From the NCBI RefSeq assembly GCF_004010195.1, contig NC_057726.1:69479774-69543773 (forward strand): DNA of 64,000 nucleotides. Reading direction: 5' to 3'. Position 1 is the first letter of the stretch, and every line of letters begins with the position of its first letter. The stretch is from Chiloscyllium plagiosum (taxonomy: Eukaryota). The notes under the pieces are model-generated. The model was not told where the DNA came from. It saw nothing but the letters and a program-made list of their open reading frames with translations, and ran no database searches. A program made the translations under genes and the position numbers. Below are positions 21,995-57,832 of the stretch, one piece after another.

Positions 21995-23685
21995 AGAACA
22001 TAGAACATAGAATAACACAGCACAGAACAGGCCCTTCGGCCCACGATGTTGTGCCGAACATTTGTCCTAGCTTAAGCACCTATCCATGTACCTATCCAAT
22101 TGCCACTTAAAGGTCACCAATGATTCTGACTCTGCCACTCCCACAGGCAGCGCATTCCATGCCCCCACCACTCTCTGGGTAAAGAACCCACCCCTGACAT
22201 CTCCCCTATACCTTCCACCCTTCACCGTAAATTTATGTCCCCTTGTAACACTCGGTTGTGCCCGGGGAAAAAGTTTCTGACTGTCTACTCTACCTATTCC
22301 TCTGATCATCTTATAAACCTCTATCAAGTCACCCCTCATCCTTCGCCGTTCCAACGAGAAAAGGCCGAGAACTCTCAACCTAGCCTCGTACGACTTCCTC
22401 TCNNNNNNNNNNNNNNNNNNNNNNNNNNNNNNNNNNNNNNNNNNNNNNNNNNNNNNNNNNNNNNNNNNNNNNNNNNNNNNNNNNNNNNNNNNNNNNNNNN
22501 NNNNNNNNNNNNNNNNNNNNNNNNNNNNNNNNNNNNNNNNNNNNNNNNNNNNNNNNNNNNNNNNNNNNNNNNNNNNNNNNNNNNNNNNNNNNNNNNNNNN
22601 NNNNNNNNNNNNNNNNNNNNNNNNNNNNNNNNNNNNNNNNNNNNNNNNNNNNNNNNNNNNNNNNNNNNNNNNNNNNNNNNNNNNNNNNNNNNNNNNNNNN
22701 NNNNNNNNNNNNNNNNNNNNNNNNNNNNNNNNNNNNNNNNNNNNNNNNNNNNNNNNNNNNNNNNNNNNNNNNNNNNNNNNNNNNNNNNNNNNNNNNNNNN
22801 NNNNNNNNNNNNNNNNNNNNNNNNNNNNNNNNNNNNNNNNNNNNNNNNNNNNNNNNNNNNNNNNNNNNNNNNNNNNNNNNNNNNNNNNNNNNNNNNNNNN
22901 NNNNNNNNNNNNNNNNNNNNNNNNNNNNNNNNNNNNNNNNNNNNNNNNNNNNNNNNNNNNNNNNNNNNNNNNNNNNNNNNNNNNNNNNNNNNNNNNNNNN
23001 NNNNNNNNNNNNNNNNNNNNNNNNNNNNNNNNNNNNNNNNNNNNNNNNNACCACCCCCGTTGGCAGTGAAGACGAAAAGATCATTGCCAACGTCTGTGCA
23101 ATTTCCTCTCTTGCTTCTCACATAATCCTAGGATATATCCCATCAGGCCCGGGGGGACTTGTCTATCCTCAAGTTGTTCAAAATGTCCAACACATCTTCC
23201 TTCCTAACAAGTATCTCCTCTACCTTACCAGTCCGTTTCATACTCTCCTCTTCAACAATAGGGTCCCTCTCATTTGTAAATACTGAAGAAAAGTACTCAT
23301 TCAAGACCTCTCCTATCTCTTCCGACTCAATACACAGTCTCCCACTACTGTCCTTGATCGGACCTACCCTCGTTCTCGTCATTCTCATGTTTCTCACATA
23401 CGCATAAAAGGCCTTCTGAACCTTGTTTCATCAGCCTTATATAAGCCTCCTTCTTCCTCTTTACTAGGTATTTAACCTCCCTCGTCAACCAAGGTTCCCT
23501 CACACGACCATCTCTTTCCTGCCTGACAGGTACATACATATCAAGGACACGTCGTATCTGTTCCTTGAAAAAGTTCCACATTTCAATGACATCCTTCCCT
23601 GACAGCCTATGCTCCCAACTTATGCTCCTCATATCCTGTCTTGCTGCATCATATTTACCCTTCCCCCAATTGTAAAACCTTTCCT
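21995..23685 (-). mobile_element. CR1 sequence flanking the assembly gap on both sides
   Basis: 3' end at 21995-22402 (RGDLIEVYK, WNALP) and upstream ORF2 at 23050-23685. Confidence 0.85.
22403..23049. other. Assembly gap (647 N)
   Basis: Run of n. Confidence 0.99.
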
Positions 23686-40886: not shown

Positions 40887-41609
40887 AAACCTCAAGATGC
40901 ATATTCAGCTGTCTCTGCATTGTATAGTCGATCGTCTGTTGTTTGAGTAACTGTTTAGTTCTGGTGTAGTTTTTTTCTGCCATCTTAGTACCAAGTCAAA
41001 ATGATATGCCTCGGATAAAAAGGAGATGCCGAGTATTTAAACAGCAAGACGATAGGGTGCTATTGTGATGTACCCGCCGACAATCATATTGAACAATAAA
41101 AGCAGAGTTATATGAAACGATTGAATATCACTCATTGGATCTCCATTGCAGTATTAAACCGAATTCTGGCTATCAGAGTTTAGCAATCGTGTCACAAGAC
41201 CGTGAAGAAGATACAGAGAACATTTCCATGAATGCACGCCTTCAGGATTTAGGGAGATTGCAGAAGTTCGGGTTTTAATATGCTGGCGGAGGGAGGTTAG
41301 TGTACTCGAAAAGGAAACTGGAACTGCTTCATCTAAAGACCGCATATGTCGGCCAAAAGCATATGTTTACAATACTCTCAGGGCAAAAAGGAGAGAAAAC
41401 CCATAAAACTACACACGGATTCTAGAAAAACTAAGAATTTGCATAGAAAATGTGGACAACAGACATTGAATATTTTCTTGAATTGTAGTCATTTATAAGT
41501 ATAAATAACAAACTGCGGTAAGGGTCCAAACCACCCAGCACCAGCAATGAAACGGTTCTTGGATCCCGGTCTCAGTGTGCATTATTAAGGACATGGTTCC
41601 AGTAGGATT

Positions 41610-42035
41610 CTAAAACAGACAAGGTTGGGACCTCTTTCCCTGGAGATGAGGAGGTTGAGAGGTTATAAGTTTTTAAAAGCTTATAAAATAATGAGGGGTA
41701 CAAATACGGTGAAGGGTCGTTGTCTTTTCCCGAGGATGGCTGATTTCAAGACTGTGGGGGGAGGGGGGCGCATTTTTAAGGTAAGAGGAGAGAGAATTTA
41801 AAAAGGCATGAGGGGCAATGCTTTTACACAGAAGTTGGTTCGCATGTGGAATAAACTTCCTGAGGAAGTGATGGACGTGGGGACTATTTCAACGTTTAAA
41901 ACACATTTGGGGAAGTACATAAATGGGAAAGGTTTGGCGGGATTACGGACAAGAGCAGGCGGGCGCGACTAGTTTATTTTGGGATAATTTTCGGCATGGA
42001 CTGGGTCGGACCTAAGGGTCCGTGCGGTATCATTC
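41610..42035 (+). mobile_element. CR1 3' end
   Basis: Matches the other CR1 3' ends in the window. Confidence 0.8.
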
Positions 42036-42093
42036 TATTGTATCACAGATTTGATGTGCGTTATTAATGATATGGTTCCAGTAGAATTCTTAT

Positions 42094-42405
42094 CCGGGCT
42101 GCCATTCGTTACGATGTGACTGACCGCGGCTGAACTTTGGAGGGGGCTGTGGGATACCATGCAGGTATAAACAGTTCCGGCTCGGATTGCCTGTGTTTCT
42201 TCCAACCCGCTGGATGCTTCATATACTCTGTCGTCTGTTGTTCGAATGACTGTACTGATTCCTGTTGTAGTTTTACTGCCATCTTTGTACCAAGTAAAAC
42301 TGGTATCCCTCGGGTAAAAGGGAGCTGTGGAGCATAAAACAGCAAGGGTCACGGATGGATCATTTCCAGGCTGCTGAGACAGAATATTCAGTGGAGTCGG
42401 TGGAA
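42094..42405 (-). pseudogene. Gene 2 C1-set exon (open frame, splice donor apparently mutated)
   Basis: Acceptor cttccccctag. VPPTPLNIL..LAVLCSTAPFYPRD..WYKDG..YTCMVSH. The expected donor position reads G|ATAAGA rather than G|GTAAGA. Confidence 0.88.
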
Positions 42406-43989
42406 CTAGGGGGAAGTGAACAGGAAGAAAAAGAAATTACCTCGACATCAGAAGACGATTACAGCCCAATCTTTTGTTTCGGCCCATTGCTGGACAGTTA
42501 CTGTCCAGTTGTGTGGAAGGTGCTCATGGTGGTGAGGGTTGGACAACGCGCGCTGTTGGTGCCGAGACTCGAACATAGAACAGTATCAGCGGGAATATTA
42601 ACTCATCCCCGGACAAAGCACGGGCAAGGAAATGTGGACCGCTGTTGTTACAGATCTCAGTTTTTCTGTTGGAAATAACTGTCGAGAGGCTCCGGAATTG
42701 GATTCATGATTTGCTATCGCCGGTGGTGCAATAAGGCAGCGGTGGAAATGACATAACAACAGAGGAGGTAAAGTAACTGATCCATAACTGACCCGGAAAC
42801 CAACTGAGTCACTTACTTATTGCAAGGCAAAAGCATGTGGAATGTACAGGACGATGGCTCTAGCAGTTTTTAGATTTTAGAAATATCCGCTTTCAAAATT
42901 TTAATATTTACCCATTAAAATCACACCACCGCCCGGAGTGTGGTGCTGGAAAAGCACAGCAGGTCAGGCAGCATTCCTGGTGAAGGGCATTTTGCCTGAA
43001 AAGTCGATTCTCCTGCCCTTTGGATACTGCCTGACCTGCTTTGCTTTTCCAGACTCCTGCCCCTTGGATGGAGCCTGACCTGCTGTGCTTTTCCACTCTC
43101 CTGGGCCTCGAATACTGCCTGACCTGCTATGCTTTTCCAGAACCACACTCTTGATTCTAGCCTACAGCATCTGCAATCCTCGCTTTCGCCTAAAAAGATA
43201 AGCCCGTCAAGAAACGTAATCAACAAAAATGAACAGAAATTGCTGGAGAAACTCAACAGGTCTGGCAGCATCTGTGAAAAAGGCAGGATGGAAACTTGGG
43301 CACCAGGGAACCTTCTTTTCAACTATCAACTTTGAGCAAAGAAAATGTAAAAAATAAATCATCAAATATGATCAAATCTGTGTCACCCGCGACGGGCTAT
43401 TGCTCTTAACCAATGTCGTTGAAATGTCGGAGCAAATTACTCCAGATACTGGAATCTGTACTGAAAGCAACAAATACTGGTGATCACAGCGGGTCAGGCA
43501 GCATCCATGGAGAGAGAGCGATTTAACGTTTGGATGACCCTTGATCAGAGCATGTATCTTTTAATCATATTGCAATAGTACTTGAGATTCCTGTTTATGT
43601 CCCACGGCTGTATAATTCAGGTAAAACTGCTGAGACATCATTCTAAGCTATTGAGCACTGGACATGAAGTACAGCAGTCAGCGATGCAAGTTAAATGTGG
43701 GCATGTATCAGGAATTGTGGAGATGTCTCCAAGGAGCGCACGCACACCGCCTGCCATTCGGACCTGCTTGGACACTATGTCACTCAAAACAAACAGCAAT
43801 GTTGCTGCCTCTCAACAGCTCTCCCAACCGATCAAGGAAACCACTCAGTTCAAAGATAATTAAGGTTGGGCAAAAATGTTAACTTGCCATTGAAGAACGT
43901 ACAACATCAAATACATTTTTAATAAATCCTGTCATGTCAGCTTTTCTAAGCACACTCTAGAATCGTTTAAGTTTTAATTTCATACATAC

Positions 43990-44264
43990 CCCACACTGTT
44001 AAATTGGACCCTGTTCCGTTTCCAATCAATTTGCCTTGACGGACGAATGTGCAATAGTACATTCCTCTGTCCTGTGGCCAGTTACTTTTCGGTCACCTTG
44101 TTCCGCGTGTAGATAATGAGGATCACCTTGCTTCCACCAGGTTACCTTGACAGCTTGGCCAACTTCAAATAAAGTACTCAAGCAATGGAAGGACACATTT
44201 GCACCCACAGTTGTCGTCACGCTCCCTGGTAACTGGGTCACTTTATCCGAGATTACCTCAGAAC
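43990..44264 (-). pseudogene. Gene 2 VJ exon with frameshifting internal deletion
   Basis: Acceptor tctttctgtag, donor G|GTATGT. KVTQLP..VSFHC..VTWWKQGD..RK, then a frame change to [18 protein letters not shown]. 275 nt against 321 nt in the otherwise colinear gene 1 exon. Confidence 0.88.
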
Positions 44265-44343
44265 CTACAGAAAGAGACAGTCACAAACAAACCAGCAAGA
44301 TTAAATAAAAGAGTTAAAGAGTGGAGTTCAGTAATTGACTTAA

Positions 44344-48530: not shown

Positions 48531-49396
48531 TTAACTGTTAGTTTAAGAAGCTCAGTTCAAACAGATAAGCTAAGACTATAACAAAATTGCTTTATGGTGG
48601 AAAAAGGGAGCATAGGAAGGAAATCACTTTGCAAGCAACAACTTTACTTTATATTAGTTGACACTATTAGAACTTATTGGGTGCTTTCAAAAGATCACAA
48701 TTCAAGCAACGACATGATCTAAATACATGAAAACTGCACTTGAGGACTGTCATCACTATGATGAATGTAACAGTAAAGATGATGTTCACCATTTTTGACA
48801 TGCAAAGGCAGATGAAAAGTAAAACTGATTAACTGATTAATCTGTACTAAATTCATGTGCAGAGCTACATAAGTGTAAGTTTCCAAATAAATAATAAAAA
48901 GCTAGACCAATAAAATATTTTATATAGTACATTGTGCAAGAAAAATAACTGAATTAAATGCCAATTCACACCTGCAAATAAGATGACAGAGCTTTAATTC
49001 CATAAAATATAAAAATTGGTTTTTCAGATGAACCACAAACTAATGAGTGTCTCCTTTGATCCAAACAATATAGACCACTATACTTTAAGCAGAATCTGCT
49101 TTCAGTTGTAATTGTTCAAAACACAGCAATGCACACAGGAAATTGCACTCACAACTTTATGGAAATCGAAACCAAATGAAATCTCATACAGTTACAGCAA
49201 GATTTGAAACAACAAAAGGTAAATTTGATGTACATTGTTTAAATTGGTTTTAAATGTTTTATTACTTCACATTGCTCCATTCTTTTTTCTGACTGAGGTT
49301 GACATATTTTGTGCATAAATCCATTTCTTTCACTGTTATGTGTTGCTGCACTGTCATAGTTTGTTCTCAACTTTTGTTTCCGCAGATCAACTTGTT

Positions 49397-49425
49397 CTAT
49401 TTTTCCACATATGTATTATTACTTC
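49397..49425 (-). CDS. Gene 1 putative terminal coding exon (GSNNTYVEK*)
   Basis: Acceptor ctgtgcag. Acceptor and stop fall at the same positions in the paralogous segment 33249-33277. AATAAA on the minus strand at 49258-49263. Confidence 0.45.
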
Positions 49426-52400
49426 CTGCACAGATTGTATAAGCAAAAATAATTAAAGTTCACAAGTTTTGGATTTAATTCTAAATCAGTCAATGTGTAA
49501 CAACTTTCAATGCTGTACTGATGAATATTACATATTGATGAAATTAACTTCCCATTTTATGTTCAAAGTTCTGCAAACACGGAAAGTAAAATAATTGCCC
49601 TTGGATTTCTGCCTTAATTATTTCAGGAAAGCACACAGAGAACACCAGGATTAATGAATTTCAATATGTAAGAGGAGACCTTTAATGCCTTTGGCAGCAC
49701 TTACTTTTGGAACAACCAAGTCACTTAGTGCAAATCTACTACTATCTGCCAGTAACACCACATGGTCTTTTTTCACAACTTCTATTGTATTTAGCTGATT
49801 AGATCATTATGCAGATATTCTTTTTTTTATCTGTCAGACTGATCAAAACAACATGTTGGAAGGTACAATGTTTGGAACCACCAAGGATCAGACAATGTTG
49901 AGGTATCAGGACAGGTAGATGAAGTGGTTAAGAAGGTATATGGGATACTTACCAATATTAGCTGTGCCATGGAGTTTAAGAACAGGGAAGCTGTGCTGAA
50001 CATATATTAAATGATGATTTGGTCACAGCTAGAGTATTATGTGCAGTTCTGGAATCCACATAATAGGAAGGATAAGCTAGCACTGGAGAAAGTGCAGAGG
50101 GACCTTATTATGATGCTGTAAAGTCTGGATAGTTTCAGTTATGAAGAGAAATTGGAAAGACTGTGATTGATTTCCTTCAATCAGCATAGATTGAGTGGGG
50201 AAATGTTAGTGATGGATAAAACTTCCCCTTGATGGAGTGGTCAATGACCATGTGGACATAGATTTAACATAAAGGGCAGAATGTTTTGAGCGGATGTGAG
50301 GAGAATCTTTTTGGATATAAATAACACTTGAAGTGGTCAAATGTTCATGTCATCCTGCAAAGCCATCAGAAAAAAAAATCAAATCTACCACTCTGATGAG
50401 TCTAGAAGGATCTCAGTAAGGCCTTTGATAAGGCTTCATATGGTCGGCTGCGACGGAAGGTTGGATCACAGGGCAAGCTGACAAACTGAAAACAAAATTG
50501 GCCTGAGGGTAAGAAGCAGAGGGTGATAGTGGAAGGATGATTGTCGGACTGGAGGCCTGTGACTAGTGGAATGTCTTGGGGTTGCTGCCGGGCCCACTAC
50601 TGTTTGTGATCTAGATCAATGATTTGGATGAGAATGTACAAGGCATGATTGGAAAGTTTACTGATGACACGGTATCATGGATACTGAGGAAGGTTATCAG
50701 AAATTGCAGCAGGACCTTGATCAGCTGGGGATGTGGGGTTTAATCTAGATCGGTATGAGGTCTTGCATTTTGGAGAGGCAAATCAAGGTAGGAGTTTTAT
50801 GATGAATGGTAGGACTTAAGGAGTGTAGTGGGATGTTGAAGCTCAGATTCACAGTTCTCATGAATGTGAAGTCAAGGGTAGAGAAGAATGTTTTTGGTAC
50901 ACTGGCCTTCATCAGTCAGGGCATTGAGTATAGAGGTTGGGAAGTTATGTTGTAGTTTTACAGAATGTTGGTGAGGCTGGATTTGAAATACTGTGTTCAG
51001 TTTTGGTCACCTTGTTATGAGAAGGATGTTATTAAACTGGAACAAGTGCAGAAGAAATTTACAAGGATGTTGCCTGAATTATAGGGAGAGGTTGGACAAG
51101 CTCGAGCAGGAGACTGAGCGGGGACCTTAAAGAGGTGTATAGGAACATGAGAGGCATGTATAGGCTGAATGCGTTGTCTTTTTTCCAGGGTTGAAGAATC
51201 GAGGACTAGAGGGTGTCCATTTAAGGTTACAGGGGAAAGAATAAAAGGGAACCTGAGGGGCAACCTTTTTACACAGAGAGTGGTACGTTTATGGATTGAG
51301 CTGCCAGCGGAAGTGGTTGAGGGGGATACATTAACAACATTTAAAAGGCATTTGGTCAAAAAATGGATAGGAAAGGCTTGGAAGGATATTGGTCAAATGC
51401 AGGGAAATGGGGTTAGCGTGGATGGACATTTTGGTCAGCATGAACCGGTATGGGCCAAAGGACAGTTATAGGACTCTACGGTTCTATGACTCAACGAAAT
51501 CTACTGGCAACCTGAGTGAAAAAAAAATGTAAAGTCAGAACTATTTCAGAGTCAGATGTTCTGGAGGCAAATGAATGAAATGAAGAAACCAGGTTGGCTG
51601 CTGTAAAAATCTTGCATCCTTGCTCAGCATTGGATATATTGAAATTTGCAAAACATCCATTTTAATTTACATTTTGCTAGATATTGTGCTCTGCATCCTC
51701 AATATCTCTTGCAATCCAATATTCACAGTATACCAATGGTGGGTTATTAAGTTTAGACGAAAAGCAGAAAATGATAGTCTGTAAGCATTACCTTTCACTT
51801 TAAGATGTTTAGCATAATCAGCAATGATAAGTGTCAGAGCGAGAATCATGAAGAAACCTAATATAAATTGAGGAATCAAAGGAATGTTGAACCTGTGGAC
51901 TAAAATATAGGATTTAGAGTAGTCATTGAATTATTATAGATAGCATGCCCTAACTAAAATTCTATGAAACAAAAAAATTCAATATTCAATAAACAATTGA
52001 AATAAATTGATCCATAATTTCAGTATCACTACCTGCAAAGTGACAAGCATCATGAATATTAGACTGGAGTCCATAGCTAAAAATTGTTCTGTGGATTGTT
52101 TTCTTTACTTTAAACAGGAAAAAAACCTTACAAAATTTAAGGATGTTTCATAACAAACAATTCTGCATGAACACAACAAATTCTTGATGGAAATTGATCT
52201 ACTTTCAACTGAGCTAAGTAAAATATAATTGGAGAGCAAAGTGCAATAAATTATTAATTCAATCTCTTGCAAAAGAACAACATGGCATTGGGCAGCACGG
52301 TAGTTCAGTGGTTAGCACTACTGTCTCATAGTGCTAGGGACCTGAGTTCAATTCCCACTTGGGCAACTGTCTATGTGGCATTTGCATATTCTCCCTGTGT

Positions 52401-55400
52401 CTTTGTGGGCTTCCTCCCACAGTACAAAGATGTGCAGGTTAGGTGAATTGGCTATGCTAAATTGCCCGTAGTGTTGGGGGTGGGGGGTAGTGGAGGATCG
52501 CTTGTGGACTTGTTGGGCTGAAGGGCCTGTTTCCACACAGTAGGTAATCTAATCTTGTCCTGATTTGAAGTTTATCTCTTACATTGCTAATATGATAAAT
52601 CTCCAGGCTAATTTGAACAATACAGCTGCAGAACAATTAATTTTATATGTGAAATATTTTGAAAGTGTCATAATCTACATATAATTTGTGGAGTTATCAG
52701 ATCTTAAAGTCACCTGCACAATCAATACATCCATCACAAAATATTGTTCTTGAAGGGATTTTAATAATTAATTGATTTCATCTGAATGCATTAGATTGGA
52801 AATTTGAAAGATGTTTCTTTCTTTAGGTAGAGGACAATTAGCCCAGATAAAATGATTTTTCAAAAAAAAAAATCAGCATCAAAATGACAGTCATGTTAAT
52901 TAACAACAAGTAAAAAAAGTAGGAGCATTATGTGCATTACCATGAATACAATAAAGTTGAAGGTAAAATCATAGTGAAATTATAGTTGTGGTATGTAAGG
53001 AGTATTTTTAATCATGGTATGATAACCATCCTTTTGCATTGAAGGATAATAATCAAATACCAACATTGAACTGTAATTCCAAGGTGTAAAGATACTTTTC
53101 AGATATGCAAATACCAAAAAAGAGACTTGCCCATAGATTTTTGTATTTACGTACAGTAAAATGCCAATAAATGTCTAATTAAGAAAATACATGGTTATAA
53201 TTATTGCCAAAGATGAATGGTTAAAGTCAATCTTCATAGTTAGAAGTAAGGAGAAAGTGAGGACTGCAGATGCTGGAGATCAGAGCTGAAAAATGTGTTG
53301 CTGGAAAAGTTGCTGGAAAAGCGCAACACGTCAGGCAGCATCCAAGGAGCAGGAGAATCGACGTTTCGGGCATAAGCCCTTCTTCAGGTTAGAAGTAAGC
53401 TAAAACATAGGTTAAAGAGCATAAGTAAGCTACTATAGTAAGAAACCCTCTCGCAAAATCTACAATTCAGAGAATTCGGAAGTAGCTGAAGAAGGAAGTC
53501 TTGATTGAGAGGCAAACAACTATAAATGTTTCCGTAAAGATGTTTTTAAAGTCACAGATCCATGGGCAGTTAGATAATGAATGATTTTCTGACCGTATTT
53601 TTGATGCAGACATACATGCTGCATTGGACACCATAGTTTTCACTAGACATTCAGAAATTTCCAACGATAAAAAAAAGAAACCGAAAAATCATAATCTGTT
53701 GCGAGCTAGTTTCATATCACACAGTGTTACCTACACCACTTGCTCCAAGCCTACTTTTCTTATGCAGGTCAGAAATGTGTAATTGCAAGGATTTAAAAAA
53801 AATTGACATACGGTTAAATGTTTTAAAAATGACGGGAAGCCATGGACAGCTTTGAAAGGAGGCGCTTGCCATTCAATAGCATGTTTGTTAGCATCCTGTA
53901 AAAATAAATCATAAATAAAGGCTCACCTTTCCGATTTGAGACAAAGAAAGTGCTGCGGACTGGAATCGGAAGCGTGCGGTGAGTGACCTGACAGGTAATA
54001 TTGTGGGCAGCACGGGTGACTTCCATGTAGCTGGTAAATTCATAAAGTCCGTTGGAATTCAAGTGCTTCAGAGCCGTTATCCCCTTGGTAACATGAAGGC
54101 CATCCTTGTACCAAGTTAGATTAATACTGTCTGGGTAAAAAGCAGCCGTTTTGCACAAGACAATTAAAGTTCCGGGAACACTGTTCTCAGGTGATTTGGA
54201 GATAATTTTCAATGGAATTGGAGGAACTGCAAAATAAAAACCGCAAAAGAAAATAACATCAGAAGCAGCCATCTGGCAATGTCCAGACGTTTCTTTTCAC
54301 AGTGAAACACTGTAAAGACTGGGCGCTGGTAATTCAGTTGCACATGCGACGGCTCTCCCTGATAATCTGCATCGGGGTTGGCTTTAAATTAACCGTAAAT
54401 TTGGACTAAACCCCTCACAGAATAACTGAGAAAAAATGATTAAGTCAGTGACCGTGCATCTCTTGAAAGCAATTAGGTTACCGTGGAAAATAACAGCCTC
54501 GAGTCTAAGCCACGAAATATTTACTTGCCCATTTATGTATTAAATCAGATTTAGGAAACAAGGCAGAATTAAGGGAAAAAGTAACGGAGGGCGGAAATGC
54601 AAATAACACGATTTGCATTGTTTTATTATTTTTGATAAAATAAGAATAATGAAATACTGAAGGAATGAGCCCCAATGTTATGTTTTTCTGTGCACCAGAA
54701 GGTGTCTGGTAAAACGGCTCTCAGTGCTGCCTCACACAGAGGCCTGGGTTGCATTCCGGCCATGTGTGTCTCTAAGGAGTTTGCACATTCTCCCCACATG
54801 GAGTCCCTCCAGCTGCTCGGTTTCCTCCCCAGTCCAAAGACGTGCAGATTCGGCGGACTGGCCAGTGACCTGCAGGATGGTTGGATTAGCCATGGTAAAA
54901 ACGTAAGGGTTGGGGATGGGTCTTTGTAGGGACGCTCATTGGAAGGTGGGTACAGACGCGATGGGCTAAATAGCCTGCACGGTAGGTATTCCATGATTCT
55001 AAAACTCATCACAAGGCAGACACCAGCCTTACACTGAAATATCAAATCCTGATTGTAGTTGAGCGAGTTTAGTGGGCAACTTTGAGGTCACTACAACAAC
55101 AAATAAACAAATACCGCCCCCCGAATTATTTAAATGGCAAGTGTCTCGATGAGGGGATGTGAATTGTGAGATCGAATCCTTGATTCCTCATTTCATCTCC
55201 ATGTGCCGATTTTATAAATTATTCTCCAATATCCAAAACCTGGTGTTACCGTGCATCATAATCATCATCTGCACAGCGAAACCCAACTCGAAATGGTAAA
55301 GATTCATAGGAGCCTTCTGGATTGATAAAGAGAGACACAAATTAATGTTTTGCTTCAATACACTGGGAATACCATTTCCAAAGGTTGGTGAAAGTAATAT

Positions 55401-56499
55401 TCGATTTTCACCGGACACATTACTATAGATGCTTGGTTCAGGAATAATATTTTATACTTAATTAGATATTTCTTCACATTCGAATCTCAGTTGGATAGTG
55501 CTTTTTATGAAGCATTAAGAGAGCAATTTCTGTGAATTCACATCTATCCCTCAGCAAGGTCTTGAGCGATAGTGGAAAAGGGGTGAAAACAGTTGCTCAT
55601 TATCCAACATTTCTCGTGGTACATTCGTGTTTTTGAGTGGAAATATATATCAGAAGGACACTTTCAATTTGTGATAACAGTGTCTACAATTTAAAGTAAT
55701 TGCAGGGTTTATCGCAAGCGCTTCATCAATTGGGAGATGAAAGGGGTTACATTTCAGTTCTCGGTCAGTTTCTAGGTCAGTCAAAACGGTGTTTAATTTA
55801 AGAGATTATATCAGACGAATCTCCTGTTACACGTTTCTTGTGTGTCCTTTCTGTTATTCAGTGCATCATTTTCAATGACAGTGGATTTATTCAATATTTT
55901 TCAGACCGGAAAGCAGACGCCAATGTTCATGGATCATCTCATTTAAAATAAACGCTTAGTATTGTGTGCTGTTGATATCATGTGAAATAATTTGCTATAC
56001 ATTGTACTTACCATAGATAACAAGCCTTGACCCAGTTCCATTTACAATGGGGCCATCCGGATGTTTTACTCCACAGTAATAGACTCCAGAGTCATCGGCC
56101 TTGACGTTTAAGAGTTGCAGAGAGGCTTCACCTTTCTTCAAAGGGAGAAATCGTTTCCTGCCGTCAGATCCTGACTGCAGAAGTTCGGTATCGCCGAGTT
56201 TCCACCAACTGATAGTCACATTGGATTGATCGCGAAAAAGAGGGAATGCGCAGTAAAAGGTAAAGCTTTCACCTTCGACAGCGTATGCACTTTCGGGGGT
56301 TTGAGACACTTTCATCTGACCATTTGCGACAGCTGTTTGGAACAAAATGGAAACGCCAAATCGGTATATTACATAGCACCAAAGGCAAGGTTGAAATGAG
56401 AAAGGACAAATCTCCAGCGGGAGAGAATGAGAAATGTATACCTGCAGAAATAATGACAAAAATATTTACAACTGGAGACAACACAATGCCGGATACCAT
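49397..56499 (-). CDS. Gene 1: non-rearranging VJ-C1-TM Ig-superfamily receptor (spliced model 56499-56442, 56332-56012, 54226-53927, 51899-51792, 49425-49397; about 271 aa)
   Basis: Manual splicing gives one open frame with GT-AG, phase-1 introns throughout. The domains are leader, V with J-like strand, C1, TM and short tail. The exact orthologue is not recognised; SIRP, NKp30, PRARP and light-chain-like proteins are all candidates. Confidence 0.8.
49830..51495 (+). mobile_element. Decayed CR1 fragments in gene 1 intron
   Basis: LFTQRVVRLWIELP and other RT remnants. Confidence 0.8.
51792..51899 (-). CDS. Gene 1 transmembrane exon (VHRFNIPLIPQFILGFFMILALTLIIADYAKHLKVK)
   Basis: Acceptor tattttag, donor AAG|GTAATG, 108 nt phase 1-1 and in frame with C1. 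A hydrophobic stretch is followed by basic residues. Confidence 0.75.
52289..52555 (+). mobile_element. HE1-type V-SINE
   Basis: Head, core and tail. Confidence 0.8.
53250..53388 (-). mobile_element. PLE-derived element with intact minimal hammerhead core (53358-53388) and direct repeat gttagaagtaag
   Basis: CUGAAGA-A-GGGC UUAU GCCC-GAAA-CG-UC. Confidence 0.75.
53927..54226 (-). CDS. Gene 1 C1-set Ig domain exon
   Basis: Acceptor ttttattttgcag, donor G|GTGAGC, 300 nt. Translation: LIVLCKTAAFYPDSINLTWYKDG..GLYEFTSYM..ITCQVTH, with the C1 hallmarks FYP and CxVxH. Confidence 0.93.
56012..56332 (-). CDS. Gene 1 V-set domain exon with germline-joined J-like G strand
   Basis: Acceptor ttttgttccaaacag, donor G|GTAAGT, 321 nt. 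Translation: KVSQTP..FTFYC..ISWWK..ASLQLLNVKADDSGVYYC..NGTGSRLVIY. Confidence 0.93.
56442..56499 (-). CDS. Gene 1 leader exon (MVSGIVLSPVVNIFVIISA)
   Basis: Kozak-like acaATGg, hydrophobic 19 aa, phase-1 donor CAG|GTATAC and a 109-nt intron before the V exon, like an Ig/TCR split leader. Confidence 0.65.
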
Positions 56500-56734
56500 T
56501 GTGAACAATCAAAATATCAAATCTCAGTCAGGAACGACAGAGCGGATCTTGCTTGGAAATATCACATGGAAGGAACTGCCCAAAGTGATTTCATCTGCTG
56601 GATGTCAACTCGAGACAAAAATTACCAATGGCGGGATGGCAAACCCATCTCAACGTACATCGTCAGCATATTTGAATAATGCATGCATTGAGGCCAAGCT
56701 TTGTTATTGCATTGATCAATCTGACTTCCGACCT

Positions 56735-57832
56735 AGAGTCATAGAGATGTGCTGCACGGAGACAGTTCAACTGGCAATGGGGTACATTTAGGGGTATGCG
56801 TGGGTTGCGCTTCGGCGGGGCAGTGTGGACTTGTTGGGCCGAAGGGCCTGTTTTCACACTGTAAGTAATCTAATCTAATCTAATCTAATCTAATCTAAAC
56901 TGACTATGCCGACCAGATATCCGAAATTCATCCAGTCCCATTGGCCCAGTAGACAGTTCCTATTCATATAGCTGTCCAGATGCCTTTCAAGTGTTACAGT
57001 TGTGCCAACCTCCACCACTTCCATGGCAGTGTATTCCATACATGTACCACCCTCTACATTAAAACGTTGCCCCTTAGGTCCTATTTAAATCTTTCCTCTC
57101 TCACCTTAAACCTATGCCCTCTAGTTTTGGACTCCCCCATTTTAGGGAATAGGCCTTGCCTATTTACTCTATCCTTACCCCTCATGGTTTTGTAAACTTC
57201 TGTAAGGTGCCCCTCAGTCTCCAATGCTCCACTGAAAACAGCCCCAGCTTATTCAGCCTCTTCCAATAGCTCAAACTCTCTAACCTTGGCAACACTCTTT
57301 AAATCTTTTCTGAACCCTTTAGAGTTTCACAACATCCTTCCTATAGCAGGGAGACCAGAATTACACAGTATTCAAAAAGTGGCCCAACCAATGTCCTGCA
57401 CAGCTGCAACATGACCTTCCAACTCCTATACTCAATGCTGTGACCAGTAAAGGTGAGCATTCGAAACACCTTCTTCACTATCCTATCTGCCTGCGACTCC
57501 ACTTTCAAGGATCTATGAATCTGCACTCCAAGGTCTCTCTGTTCAGTAGGATCTGTCGTTAGGTGTATAAGTCCTGTCTTGATTTGCCTTTTCAAAATGC
57601 AGCACCTTACATTGATCTCAATTAAACTCCATCGGCCAGTCCTCGGCCCATTGGCCCATCTGATCAAGATCCTGCTGTCCTCTAATGTAACCTTCTTCAT
57701 TGTTCAGAACACCTCCAATTATGGTGTAGTCTGCAAACTTACTAACTGAACCTCCTATGATCACATCCAAATCATTTATATGAATGACAAAAAGCAGTGA
57801 ACCCAGTACCGATCCTGTGGCACATTGCTGGT
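56735..57832 (-). mobile_element. CR1 3' portion with nested plus-strand SINE tail (56775-56897), about 240 bp upstream of the gene 1 ATG
   Basis: RDLGVQIH, FEYCV and (TAATC)n. Confidence 0.88.

What the first reader, a model, noticed from the sequence alone, without database searches (positions are those of the whole stretch)
49397..56499. Apparently intact non-rearranging VJ-C1-TM receptor gene with antigen-receptor architecture in a shark
Seen: a split leader, one exon with a complete V domain including the J-like GxG strand (NGTGSRLVI), one C1-set exon and a TM exon, all joined in phase 1. No heptamer-spacer-nonamer signal was found. Known: C1-set domains are largely confined to Ig, TCR, MHC, b2m, tapasin, SIRP and a few B7-type proteins. 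Germline VJ genes (NKp30, NITR, SIRP, PRARP, shark UrIg) are discussed as relatives of the pre-RAG antigen-receptor ancestor. Inference: this is a member of a poorly characterised chondrichthyan VJ-C1 receptor family. The WWK C-strand and NGTGS G-strand lack the F/W-GxG of true J segments and are shared with gene 2, so they may be a family signature.
Basis: partly seen in the sequence, partly recalled or inferred. Interest (0 to 1): 0.88.

Follow-up and report, generated by a model that had tools for sequence, protein, structure and literature searches.

The report
Expressed shark non-rearranging VJ-C1 receptor gene
This is a real, intact and transcribed shark gene for a membrane protein built like one chain of an antigen receptor but needing no gene rearrangement, and it belongs to a large, little-studied receptor family found across sharks, rays and chimaeras.

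Summary
On the minus strand there are five phase-1 exons: leader 56499-56442, V with a J-like strand 56332-56012, C1-set 54226-53927, TM 51899-51792, and a 29-nt terminal exon 49425-49397. Pfam gives V-set 9e-11 and C1-set 1.8e-12. No RSS was found.

Each exon's translation is an exact substring of RefSeq XP_043563324.1. That is a 271-aa Chiloscyllium plagiosum model auto-named "immunoglobulin lambda-1 light chain-like", so the gene model is already public.

Public run contigs confirm two of the four junctions, C1>TM and TM>last exon.

The gene has one-to-one orthologues in galeomorph sharks. It sits in a large family named in 16 chondrichthyan species, under at least six conflicting automatic names.

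Family signature on 84 proteins: WW[K/R], and N-G-T/S-G-S where a true J has F/W-G-x-G. Of the 84, 29 carry ITIM/ITSM tails, and this gene is a short-tailed member.

It is not SIRP proper, IgL, UrIg, TAPBPL or B7H6 by the tests run. Six literature searches found no description of the family.

Other first-stage notes of this scan, which I did not check, report sister clusters on the same chromosome piece.

The parts
56442..56499 (-). Exon 1: start codon and the first 19 codons plus 1 nt of the split leader
   Evidence: Read. The translation MVSGIVLSPVVNIFVIISA equals P0006 residues 1-19.
56012..56332 (-). Exon 2: end of the leader plus a complete V domain that includes the J-like G strand (VNGTGSRLVIY), all in one exon
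   Evidence: Pfam V-set 9.1e-11. Equals P0006 residues 21-126. No RSS. This junction was not tested with reads.
53927..54226 (-). Exon 3: C1-set Ig domain (FYP...W...CQVTH)
   Evidence: Pfam C1-set 1.8e-12. Equals P0006 residues 128-226. Its donor is joined to the TM exon in run X5. No letter differences are listed in this exon in X5 (table 3).
51792..51899 (-). Exon 4: membrane-proximal stalk, transmembrane helix and start of the tail (HRFNIPLIPQFILGFFMILALTLIIADYAKHLKVK)
   Evidence: Equals P0006 residues 228-262. Joints 51899>53927 (X5) and 49424/5>51791/2 (X1, X5). Aligns with the TM of the orthologues.
49397..49425 (-). Exon 5: last 8 codons (SNNTYVEK) plus the stop codon TAG
   Evidence: Equals P0006 residues 264-271. 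A spliced contig in X1 and X5 crosses into it.
49000..49396 (-). 3' UTR, which continues beyond 49000
   Evidence: X5 contig record 9 (1118 nt, depth 137) covers 49000-49424 and has 582 more letters beyond 49000. X5 depth is about 138 in the bins 49000-49393, 22.6 in the bin 49394-49590 that straddles the exon border, and 0 in 49591-49787.

Best explanation
This is an intact, transcribed, germline-encoded (non-rearranging) gene for a type I membrane glycoprotein. Its parts are a signal peptide, one V domain whose J-like G strand lies in the same exon, one C1-set domain, a short stalk, a TM helix and a 16-19-residue tail with no ITIM, ITSM or ITAM.

It is the bamboo-shark orthologue of a one-per-species lineage conserved in galeomorph sharks. 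That lineage lies inside a large family of VJ-C1 receptors named here only in cartilaginous fishes. Many paralogues in the family carry ITIM/ITSM tails. Others have short tails, often with a basic residue at the outer end of the TM. This is the layout of a paired inhibitory/activating innate receptor family.

Inferred mechanism:
- The V domain binds a ligand that is still unknown.
- The C1 domain acts as a spacer.
- The short-tailed product signals through an associated adaptor chain or acts as a non-signalling or decoy partner of ITIM-bearing relatives. A RefSeq isoform that skips the TM exon would give a soluble form.
- The family-wide N-G-T/S sequon sits where a true J has F/W-G-x-G. This suggests a glycan at the face that Ig and TCR V domains use to pair, so the V domain probably does not form an Ig-like V-V heterodimer.

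Shown: gene structure, domain types, two splice junctions, orthology, the family signature and the mix of tail types.
Inferred: surface expression, ligand binding, adaptor coupling, glycosylation and no V-V pairing.
For: - Exon structure and phases.
- Pfam V-set and C1-set on single exons.
- Exact identity of every exon to XP_043563324.1.
- Spliced contigs at C1>TM and TM>last exon, with exon depth 78-138 against intron depth 0-38 in X5.
- No RSS.
- Orthologues at 94% (Hemiscyllium), 89% (C. punctatum), 60% (Carcharodon, Cetorhinus, Mustelus) and 55-56% (Scyliorhinus) identity.
- These form an 8-row clade with SH-aLRT 100 that follows the species tree.
- Family size: 118 cluster representatives at E<=1e-30.
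- Taxa: 41 of 43 named hits at E<=2e-54 are all Chondrichthyes.
- Signature counts on 84 proteins: four canonical Cys 84/84, WW[KR] 74/84, GxG 80/84, N before GxG 68/84, sequon 70/84.
- Tails: 63 of 84 proteins with a detected TM; 29 of these have an ITIM or ITSM and 34 have none.
- The orthologues carry P/H-R-F at the outer TM border and D/E-H at the inner border.
- TM-less isoform X3 (P0012).
Against: - The L>V and V>C1 junctions were not tested with reads.
- Runs X5 and X1 are not on record as RNA. I infer RNA from the spliced joints and the exon/intron depth ratio.
- The two single-cell RNA runs gave no reads on the exons. X9 had reads on repeats only and X10 had none; only about 2% and 6% of those runs were read.
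- In this species and its closest relatives the TM-border Arg of the orthologues is Gln (PQF instead of PRF). This weakens the adaptor-coupling idea for this particular gene.
- No ligand, tissue or cell type is known.
- Restriction to Chondrichthyes rests on word-seeded searches and on 10+43 named proteins. Most of the 150 listed representatives have no name.
Confidence: 0.78

Rival explanations
1. It is the shark member of the SIRP family proper, meaning orthologous or co-orthologous to SIRPalpha/beta/gamma. On this reading it is a CD47-type 'self' receptor that has lost one C1 domain.
For: SIRPalpha-like is the most common automatic name in the family. The family profile matches SIRPalpha over V plus C1 at 119 bits. 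Paralogue tails pair LTYAxL-type ITIMs with TEYAEI-type motifs, which resembles what I recall of SIRPalpha tails. SIRP is also a paired family with VJ-like V and C1 domains.
Against: There is one C1 domain, not two. P0006 scores 62 bits on SIRPalpha. That is about the same as on single light chains (55-58 bits) and on UrIg2 (68 bits). A true V-C1-C1 SIRP relative from the same search (P0131) scores 182 bits, E=1e-52, on SIRPalpha. P0131 scores only about 120 bits on the family profile, where members score 150-465. ITIM/ITSM pairs of this type occur in many receptor families (my own knowledge).
Confidence: 0.12
2. It is a germline-joined immunoglobulin light-chain gene or a derivative of one, as its RefSeq name suggests.
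For: The RefSeq name is 'immunoglobulin lambda-1 light chain-like'. The best single stretch of the family profile in the PDB is the J plus C-lambda part of a lambda chain, at 71 bits. Sharks are known to have germline-joined IgL genes (my own knowledge).
Against: It has a TM exon and a cytoplasmic tail that are spliced in transcripts. There is no F/W-G-x-G, and none of the 84 family proteins has F or W at the residue directly before G-x-G. It has WWK where, from memory, light chains have WYQQ. No cysteine follows the C domain; the only Cys are at 47, 106, 151 and 205. Similarity to light chains is only 55-58 bits over V plus C. Paralogues carry ITIM tails.
Confidence: 0.02
3. It is a B7-family or tapasin-related type ligand or chaperone (NCR3LG1/B7H6-, CD276- or TAPBPL-like) rather than a receptor.
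For: Orthologues carry these automatic names. CD276 scores 50-78 bits in the PDB searches. The language-model atlas lists tapasin-related and CD80 clusters among its look-alikes at 0.95-0.96. The short tail with no signalling motif would fit a ligand.
Against: The 271-aa product has no room for the N-terminal domain of TAPBP(L). The atlas tapasin-related clusters are 434-440 aa. The G strand has the J-like GxG, which from memory B7 V domains lack. Twenty-nine of the 63 family members with a detected TM carry ITIM or ITSM tails, which marks receptors. Scores on CD276 come from a four-domain chain and are no higher than on light chains.
Confidence: 0.06
4. It is transcribed but has no function of its own: a decaying member of a birth-and-death cluster.
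For: Its tandem neighbour (gene 2) is broken, and a further C1 fragment carries a stop codon. The TM-border Arg of the orthologues is Gln here. X5 holds much unspliced sequence.
Against: The frame is open through all five exons and all canonical residues are kept. One-to-one orthologues are kept across three shark orders at 55-60% identity, in a clade that follows the species tree. No coding differences appear in the laid exons in X5.
Confidence: 0.04

Closest known systems
SIRP family (SIRPalpha/beta/gamma)
   Same: Both have a germline V domain with a J-like G strand followed by C1-set domain(s), a TM, and a paired family logic of ITIM-bearing and short-tailed members. SIRPalpha is among the top PDB matches.
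   Different: This gene has one C1 domain instead of two. It shows no privileged sequence affinity: 62 bits on SIRPalpha against 182 bits for a true SIRP. It has the WW[KR] and N-G-T-G-S signature. SIRP's ligand is CD47; here the ligand is unknown.
UrIg / UrIg2 (elasmobranch non-rearranging antibody-like genes; PMC12227049 section 7 read; PDB 9dmx)
   Same: Both have a split leader, a single-exon VJ domain, C1-type constant domains, no rearrangement, and occurrence in cartilaginous fish.
   Different: That paper (section 7) describes UrIg2 with 9-11 C domains and a V-C1-C2-C3 homodimer. This gene has one C1 domain. The family profile scores 58 bits on UrIg2's V-end plus C1 stretch, less than the 71 bits on a lambda J-C stretch. 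The paper's main text does not contain the word SIRP (0 occurrences).
Immunoglobulin lambda light chain, including germline-joined shark IgL
   Same: Both have V-J-C1 in the same order and size. This is the best single-stretch PDB match (J plus C-lambda, 71 bits).
   Different: This gene has a TM exon and tail, no F/W-G-x-G, no C-terminal Cys, no RSS, and ITIM-bearing paralogues.
NKp30 / NCR3
   Same: Both have a non-rearranging VJ-type V domain. From memory, human NKp30 has a G-N-G-T-R-L-V-V G strand with an N-glycan there and an Arg in the TM. This resembles N-G-T-G-S-x-L-x-V here and the PRF border of the orthologues.
   Different: NKp30 has no C domain. It was not among the 60 best PDB matches of the V exon. 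The NKp30 details are recalled and were not tested here.
PRARP (chicken non-rearranging VJ-C1 genes, Fu et al. 2019) and teleost NITRs
   Same: From memory and from one citing passage (PMC10751288), these are non-rearranging VJ genes discussed as relics of the antigen-receptor precursor. NITRs are a paired ITIM/charged-TM family.
   Different: This could not be tested. The PRARP paper is not held and no PRARP or NITR sequence was available. From memory, NITRs have no C1 domain.

Membership tests
Non-rearranging VJ-C1 IgSF receptor (the kind) | V domain and J-like G strand encoded in one exon, with no RSS | tested here: met
   One 321-nt exon holds the V domain through VNGTGSRLVIY. There were 0 exact RSS matches and 2 weak ones against 0.77 expected, neither at the V exon.
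Non-rearranging VJ-C1 IgSF receptor (the kind) | A C1-set domain follows the V domain | tested here: met
   Pfam C1-set 1.8e-12, 47.8 bits against a cut-off of 21; C2-set_2 reaches only 8.6e-4.
Non-rearranging VJ-C1 IgSF receptor (the kind) | Expressed as a spliced mRNA | tested here: inconclusive
   Two of four junctions were seen in contigs of runs X1 and X5.
Chondrichthyan WWK / NGTGS VJ-C1 family (no published name found) | WW[KR] in strand C and N-G-[TS]-G-[ST]-x-L-x-V in strand G | tested here: met
   This gene has WWK and VNGTGSRLVI. Family counts are 74/84, 80/84 and 68/84.
Chondrichthyan WWK / NGTGS VJ-C1 family (no published name found) | Full-length profile match far above other IgSF proteins | tested here: met
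   Members score 150-465 bits in one stretch. The SIRP-like P0131 scores about 120 bits in two stretches.
SIRP | V-C1-C1 ectodomain | tested here: not met
   There is a single C1 exon between the V and TM exons.
SIRP | Specific sequence affinity to SIRPalpha/gamma | tested here: not met
   P0006 scores 62 bits on SIRPalpha and 55-58 bits on light chains. The true SIRP P0131 scores 182 bits, E=1e-52.
SIRP | CD47 binding and conserved synteny | not testable with these tools
Immunoglobulin light chain | F-G-x-G J motif, secreted chain with a C-terminal Cys, RSS or germline-joined VJ | tested here: not met
   N stands in place of F/W. The TM exon is spliced in. The only Cys are at 47, 106, 151 and 205.
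UrIg / UrIg2 | VJ followed by several C1-type domains | tested here: not met
   There is one C1 domain, and the score on 9dmx is no better than on a lambda chain.
TAPBP / TAPBPL | Large N-terminal domain before the Ig domains | tested here: not met
   The mature protein starts directly with the V domain, and the whole product is 271 aa. This defining feature is recalled.
NKp30 (NCR3) | A single V domain with no C domain | tested here: not met
   A C1-set exon is present. This defining feature is recalled.
PRARP | Sequence relationship to the chicken PRARP genes | not tested
   No PRARP sequence or paper was available.

The most novel reading that the evidence does not exclude
The WWK/NGTGS family is a third, chondrichthyan-wide lineage of non-rearranging VJ-C1 genes. 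It would be distinct from UrIg/UrIg2 and from SIRP, and would date at least to the common ancestor of sharks, rays and chimaeras. On this reading it was expanded into megabase-scale clusters as the cartilaginous-fish counterpart of teleost NITRs or mammalian SIRP/LILR-type paired receptors. Its J strand would have been converted into a glycan site that blocks Ig-like V-V pairing. That would make it an independent sample of what the pre-RAG VJ-C1 gene pool looked like, and gene 1 would be its conserved, non-inhibitory, single-copy member with a fixed ligand.
Probability: 0.35. Interest if true: 0.75.

Novelty: new member of a known kind. Interest (0 to 1): 0.55.

Why it matters
Single-exon VJ domains linked to C1 domains are the gene type thought to have been split by the RAG transposon. 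The few examples so far (SIRP, NKp30, PRARP, UrIg/UrIg2) are each discussed as clues to that event (PMC10751288 passages; PMC12227049 section 7 and passages).

This work shows that cartilaginous fishes carry a large, conserved and expressed family of such genes. Genome pipelines label it with at least six unrelated names, and the papers I could search do not describe it.

A consistent definition is now available: exon plan, the WW[KR]/N-G-T-G-S signature, the tail classes and an orthologous short-tailed lineage. With it, the family can be placed in trees with Ig, TCR, UrIg and SIRP. It can also be mapped against MHC paralogons and tested as a paired innate receptor system in the oldest jawed vertebrates.

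Tried and rejected
Rejected readings:
- A TM exon starting at the nearer AG (ccacag|G) is out of frame. The acceptor 5 nt upstream (tttag|TCCACAGG, exon start 51899) restores phase 1 and is the one seen in X5.
- Read-through of the TM donor would add 43 residues. This is rejected because the spliced form is the one found.
- The AATAAA at 49263 is not the only transcript end. The X5 contig runs at least 582 nt beyond 49000.
- IgL, SIRP proper, TAPBPL, B7H6/CD276 and UrIg membership were each considered and not met (see the membership table).

What led nowhere:
- The literature search for 'PRARP' returned 106 papers; the 15 listed were all on unrelated acronyms.
- Searches found no paper describing this family. 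The search was poorly focused.
- The UrIg J Immunol paper (PMC10530332) and the PRARP paper were not held.
- Supplements of PMC10751288 and PMC12227049 were not opened because they are closed. They may list such genes.
- The protein atlas gave only generic V-C1 look-alikes.
- The single-cell RNA runs X9 and X10 gave no exon reads.
- The rest of the window is LINE reverse-transcriptase fragments plus the broken paralogue, so the window gives no synteny.
- My first motif counts under-counted because of a poor regular expression. I replaced them with alignment-based counts.

Not done:
- A domain-wise phylogeny with reference families, because no reference sequences were obtainable from the tools.
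- Structure prediction and fold search.
- The genomic context of the orthologues.

Rows dropped: the tree and counts used 84 of the 201 stored proteins. I left out proteins over 520 aa, proteins that did not cover both V and C1 in one stretch of the A1 profile (93 passed), and 9 isoform or duplicate rows: P0010, P0012, P0014, P0016, P0166-P0169 and P0172.

Full report
THE OBSERVATION

The gene lies on the minus strand. Reading the reverse complement and checking borders by script gives five exons:
- Leader, 56499-56442 (58 nt; ATG; donor GT).
- V exon, 56332-56012 (321 nt; acceptor AG, donor GTAAGT).
- C1 exon, 54226-53927 (300 nt).
- TM exon, 51899-51792 (108 nt).
- Terminal exon, 49425-49397 (29 nt, ending in TAG).

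The sum is 816 nt, which is 271 codons plus the stop. Every junction is phase 1, with split codons G|CT, G|TT, G|TC and G|GA. The nearer AG before the TM exon gives the wrong frame. The acceptor five bases upstream is the correct one.

Searched one exon at a time, Pfam gives V-set 9.1e-11 for the V exon and C1-set 1.8e-12 for the C1 exon, both above the curated cut-offs. The V exon contains the whole domain, including the G strand VNGTGSRLVIY, so the V and J-like parts are not separated.

No recombination signal is present. There were no exact heptamer-spacer-nonamer matches in the window. A relaxed scan of 49000-57000 found two weak matches against 0.77 expected from shuffles, neither next to the V exon.

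The one slip is that the model has four junctions, not five.

THE GENE IS ALREADY A PUBLIC MODEL

A search with the V exon inside its own genomic ORF found two catshark proteins at 59-61% identity. A search with one of them then returned a 271-aa protein, P0006. This is XP_043563324.1 of Chiloscyllium plagiosum, auto-named "immunoglobulin lambda-1 light chain-like isoform X1".

The translation of each exon is an exact substring of P0006, at residues 1-19, 21-126, 128-226, 228-262 and 264-271. The four missing residues are the split codons.

The full-length searches below used this database protein and its relatives.

RefSeq also lists three other isoforms:
- One that skips the TM exon and would be secreted (P0012).
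- One that uses an internal acceptor in the TM exon (P0014).
- One that lacks the V exon (P0011).

TRANSCRIPTION

I chose that stretch to test the uncertain 3' part of the gene. Two joints fall exactly on predicted exon borders, with GT..AG on the minus strand:
- 49424-5 to 51791-2 (TM exon to terminal exon), in run X1 (depth 3.7) and run X5 (depth 137).
- 51899 to 53927 (C1 exon to TM exon), in run X5 (depth 93).

In X5 the bins holding exons have depth 78-138, and intron bins free of repeats have 0-38. The run has only 1.9 billion letters. I therefore read X5 as RNA with a good deal of unspliced precursor, although its kind is not on record.

The spliced X5 contig continues 582 letters beyond 49000, so the 3' UTR is about 1 kb or more. 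No letter differences are listed inside the three coding exons that were laid.

The two single-cell RNA runs gave nothing on the exons, and only about 2% and 6% of those runs were read. The leader>V and V>C1 junctions were outside the stretch. They rest only on the RefSeq model and on conservation of the junction residues in the orthologues.

THE FAMILY

An alignment of ten relatives (A1) shows strong conservation of WWKLG, DSGVYYC, NGTGS, VPPIPL, CKTAAFYP, TWYKDG and CQVTHRTL.

A profile search of 1.84 billion cluster representatives found 3406 proteins at E<=0.001, 837 at E<=1e-10 and 118 at E<=1e-30. Several tens of these are single-stretch V-C1-TM matches at 150-465 bits.

Ten representatives looked up by name were nine cartilaginous fishes and one turtle protein. 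The turtle protein has three V domains and no C1 domain.

A word-seeded profile search with 40 members (A2) returned 43 named proteins. Forty-one of them, at E<=2e-54, all come from Chondrichthyes. Next come two teleost MUC18 proteins at E=8e-8 and 7e-6.

Over all calls, 16 species are named: sharks of five orders, four batoid genera and the chimaera Callorhinchus milii. The automatic names disagree: SIRPalpha-like, SIRPbeta1-like, Ig lambda light chain-like, tapasin-related protein-like, NCR3 ligand 1-like, CD276 homolog, and one isoform named as an MHC class II beta chain.

In Heterodontus, Heptranchias and Callorhinchus, the named members that carry a contig record all lie on one contig per species.

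FAMILY SIGNATURE AND TAILS

I aligned 84 proteins. These were taken from 201 stored proteins, and the dropped rows are listed under Tried and rejected. The counts are:
- Four canonical cysteines: 84/84.
- WW[KR] in strand C: 74/84.
- GxG of the G strand: 80/84.
- Residue before GxG is N: 68/84. It is never F or W.
- An N-x-S/T sequon overlaps the motif: 70/84.

So the J-like strand is real, but the aromatic residue of a true J is replaced by a likely glycosylation site. This is the basis for my inference that these V domains do not pair as Ig or TCR V domains do.

For the tails, a TM helix was detected in 63 of the 84 proteins. Of these 63, 29 have an ITIM and/or ITSM in the tail; P0009 of the same species, for example, has LTYATV and TEYAEI. 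The other 34 have neither, and many of those have R or K at the outer end of the TM. This is the pattern of a paired inhibitory/activating receptor family.

WHERE THIS GENE SITS

In a quick maximum-likelihood tree of the 84 proteins, the gene groups with seven others. These come from Hemiscyllium, C. punctatum, Carcharodon, Cetorhinus, Mustelus and two Scyliorhinus species. The clade has SH-aLRT 100 and its branching follows the species tree. This is a one-per-species orthologous lineage, nested in a 25-row clade (support 95).

All members of this lineage have short tails of 3-26 residues. All except the three bamboo and epaulette shark proteins have P/H-R-F at the outer TM border; those three have PQF. 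Most have D/E-H at the inner border. The tail of this gene (DYAKHLKVKGSNNTYVEK) has no recognised signalling motif.

COMPARISON WITH KNOWN FAMILIES

Against solved structures, P0006 scores as follows:
- 74 bits on a fused lambda/heavy construct.
- 68 bits on UrIg2, which has four domains.
- 62 bits on SIRPalpha, which has three domains.
- 55-58 bits on single light chains.
- 50 bits on CD276.

As a control, P0131 is a V-C1-C1 protein from the same search, and it scores 182 bits (E=1e-52) on SIRPalpha. On this family's profile it scores only about 120 bits.

The 40-member profile gives 71 bits on the J plus C-lambda stretch, 58 bits on the UrIg2 V-end plus C1 stretch, and 119 bits on SIRPalpha over two stretches.

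The family is therefore about equally distant from IgL, SIRP and UrIg. It is not a member of any of them by the features I could test. The protein atlas gave the same generic set of neighbours.

The UrIg2 paper (section 7 and passages read) and the shark MHC paper (passages read) discuss UrIg, UrIg2, NCR3 and PRARP as the non-rearranging VJ genes. In the main text of the UrIg2 paper, 'SIRP' occurs 0 times. Six searches found no paper on this family. Supplements were closed, and the PRARP and first UrIg papers are not held.

CONTEXT

The window holds a broken tandem paralogue. Its V exon has an internal deletion and a frame change at about 43990-44260, while its C1 exon at 42095-42406 is intact. 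There is also a further C1 fragment with a stop codon at about 41000. The rest of the window is LINE fragments.

Other first-stage notes of this scan report further VJ-C1 clusters on the same assembly piece, from about 8.0 Mb before to 0.69 Mb beyond this window. All of the scan's MHC notes lie on other pieces. I did not check these notes, so they are leads only.

VERDICT

This is a transcribed, non-rearranging VJ-C1-TM gene. It is the conserved short-tailed member of a large cartilaginous-fish receptor family that is publicly modelled but inconsistently named and, as far as I could search, not described in print.

Its function is inferred, not shown. Open points are the two untested junctions, the tissue of expression, the ligand, the signalling partner, the true phylogenetic position and the synteny.

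Noticed in passing
window 41000-44300, minus strand: A tandem paralogue ('gene 2'). Its V exon keeps WWK and [10 protein letters not shown] but has lost the stretch between strand C' and strand F, with a change of frame. Its C1 exon (42095-42406) is intact by Pfam (2.1e-11). A second C1-like fragment near 41012 carries an in-frame stop (TWY*DG).
   Followed up: partly
window 52290-52545 and 53250-53390: Two short interspersed repeats in intron 3 reach summed contig depths of hundreds of thousands to millions in runs X1 and X5, and attract almost all reads of the single-cell run X9. Any read-based test of this gene must mask them.
   Followed up: no
P0012, P0014, P0011 (RefSeq isoforms of this gene): RefSeq predicts three other isoforms. 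One skips the TM exon and would be a soluble V-C1 protein. One uses an internal acceptor in the TM exon. One lacks the V domain and is auto-named as an MHC class II beta chain. None of the shown joints supports or excludes them.
   Followed up: partly
P0108 (turtle, Carettochelys insculpta, 448 aa): A tetrapod protein with three tandem V domains. Two of them end in N-G-S/T-G-T-x-V-T-I, the same glycan-type J-like motif. It also has a TM and a VTYADL tail but no C1 domain. The motif may therefore be older than the cartilaginous-fish family.
   Followed up: partly
P0008, P0003, P0005 (orthologue and paralogue models in other sharks): Several RefSeq models of family members carry N-terminal extensions. 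In P0008 the extension matches LINE reverse-transcriptase fragments of the window. These look like mis-predicted first exons.
   Followed up: no
window 22403-23049: An N run of 647 letters, either an assembly gap or a masked stretch. It was left untouched.
   Followed up: no
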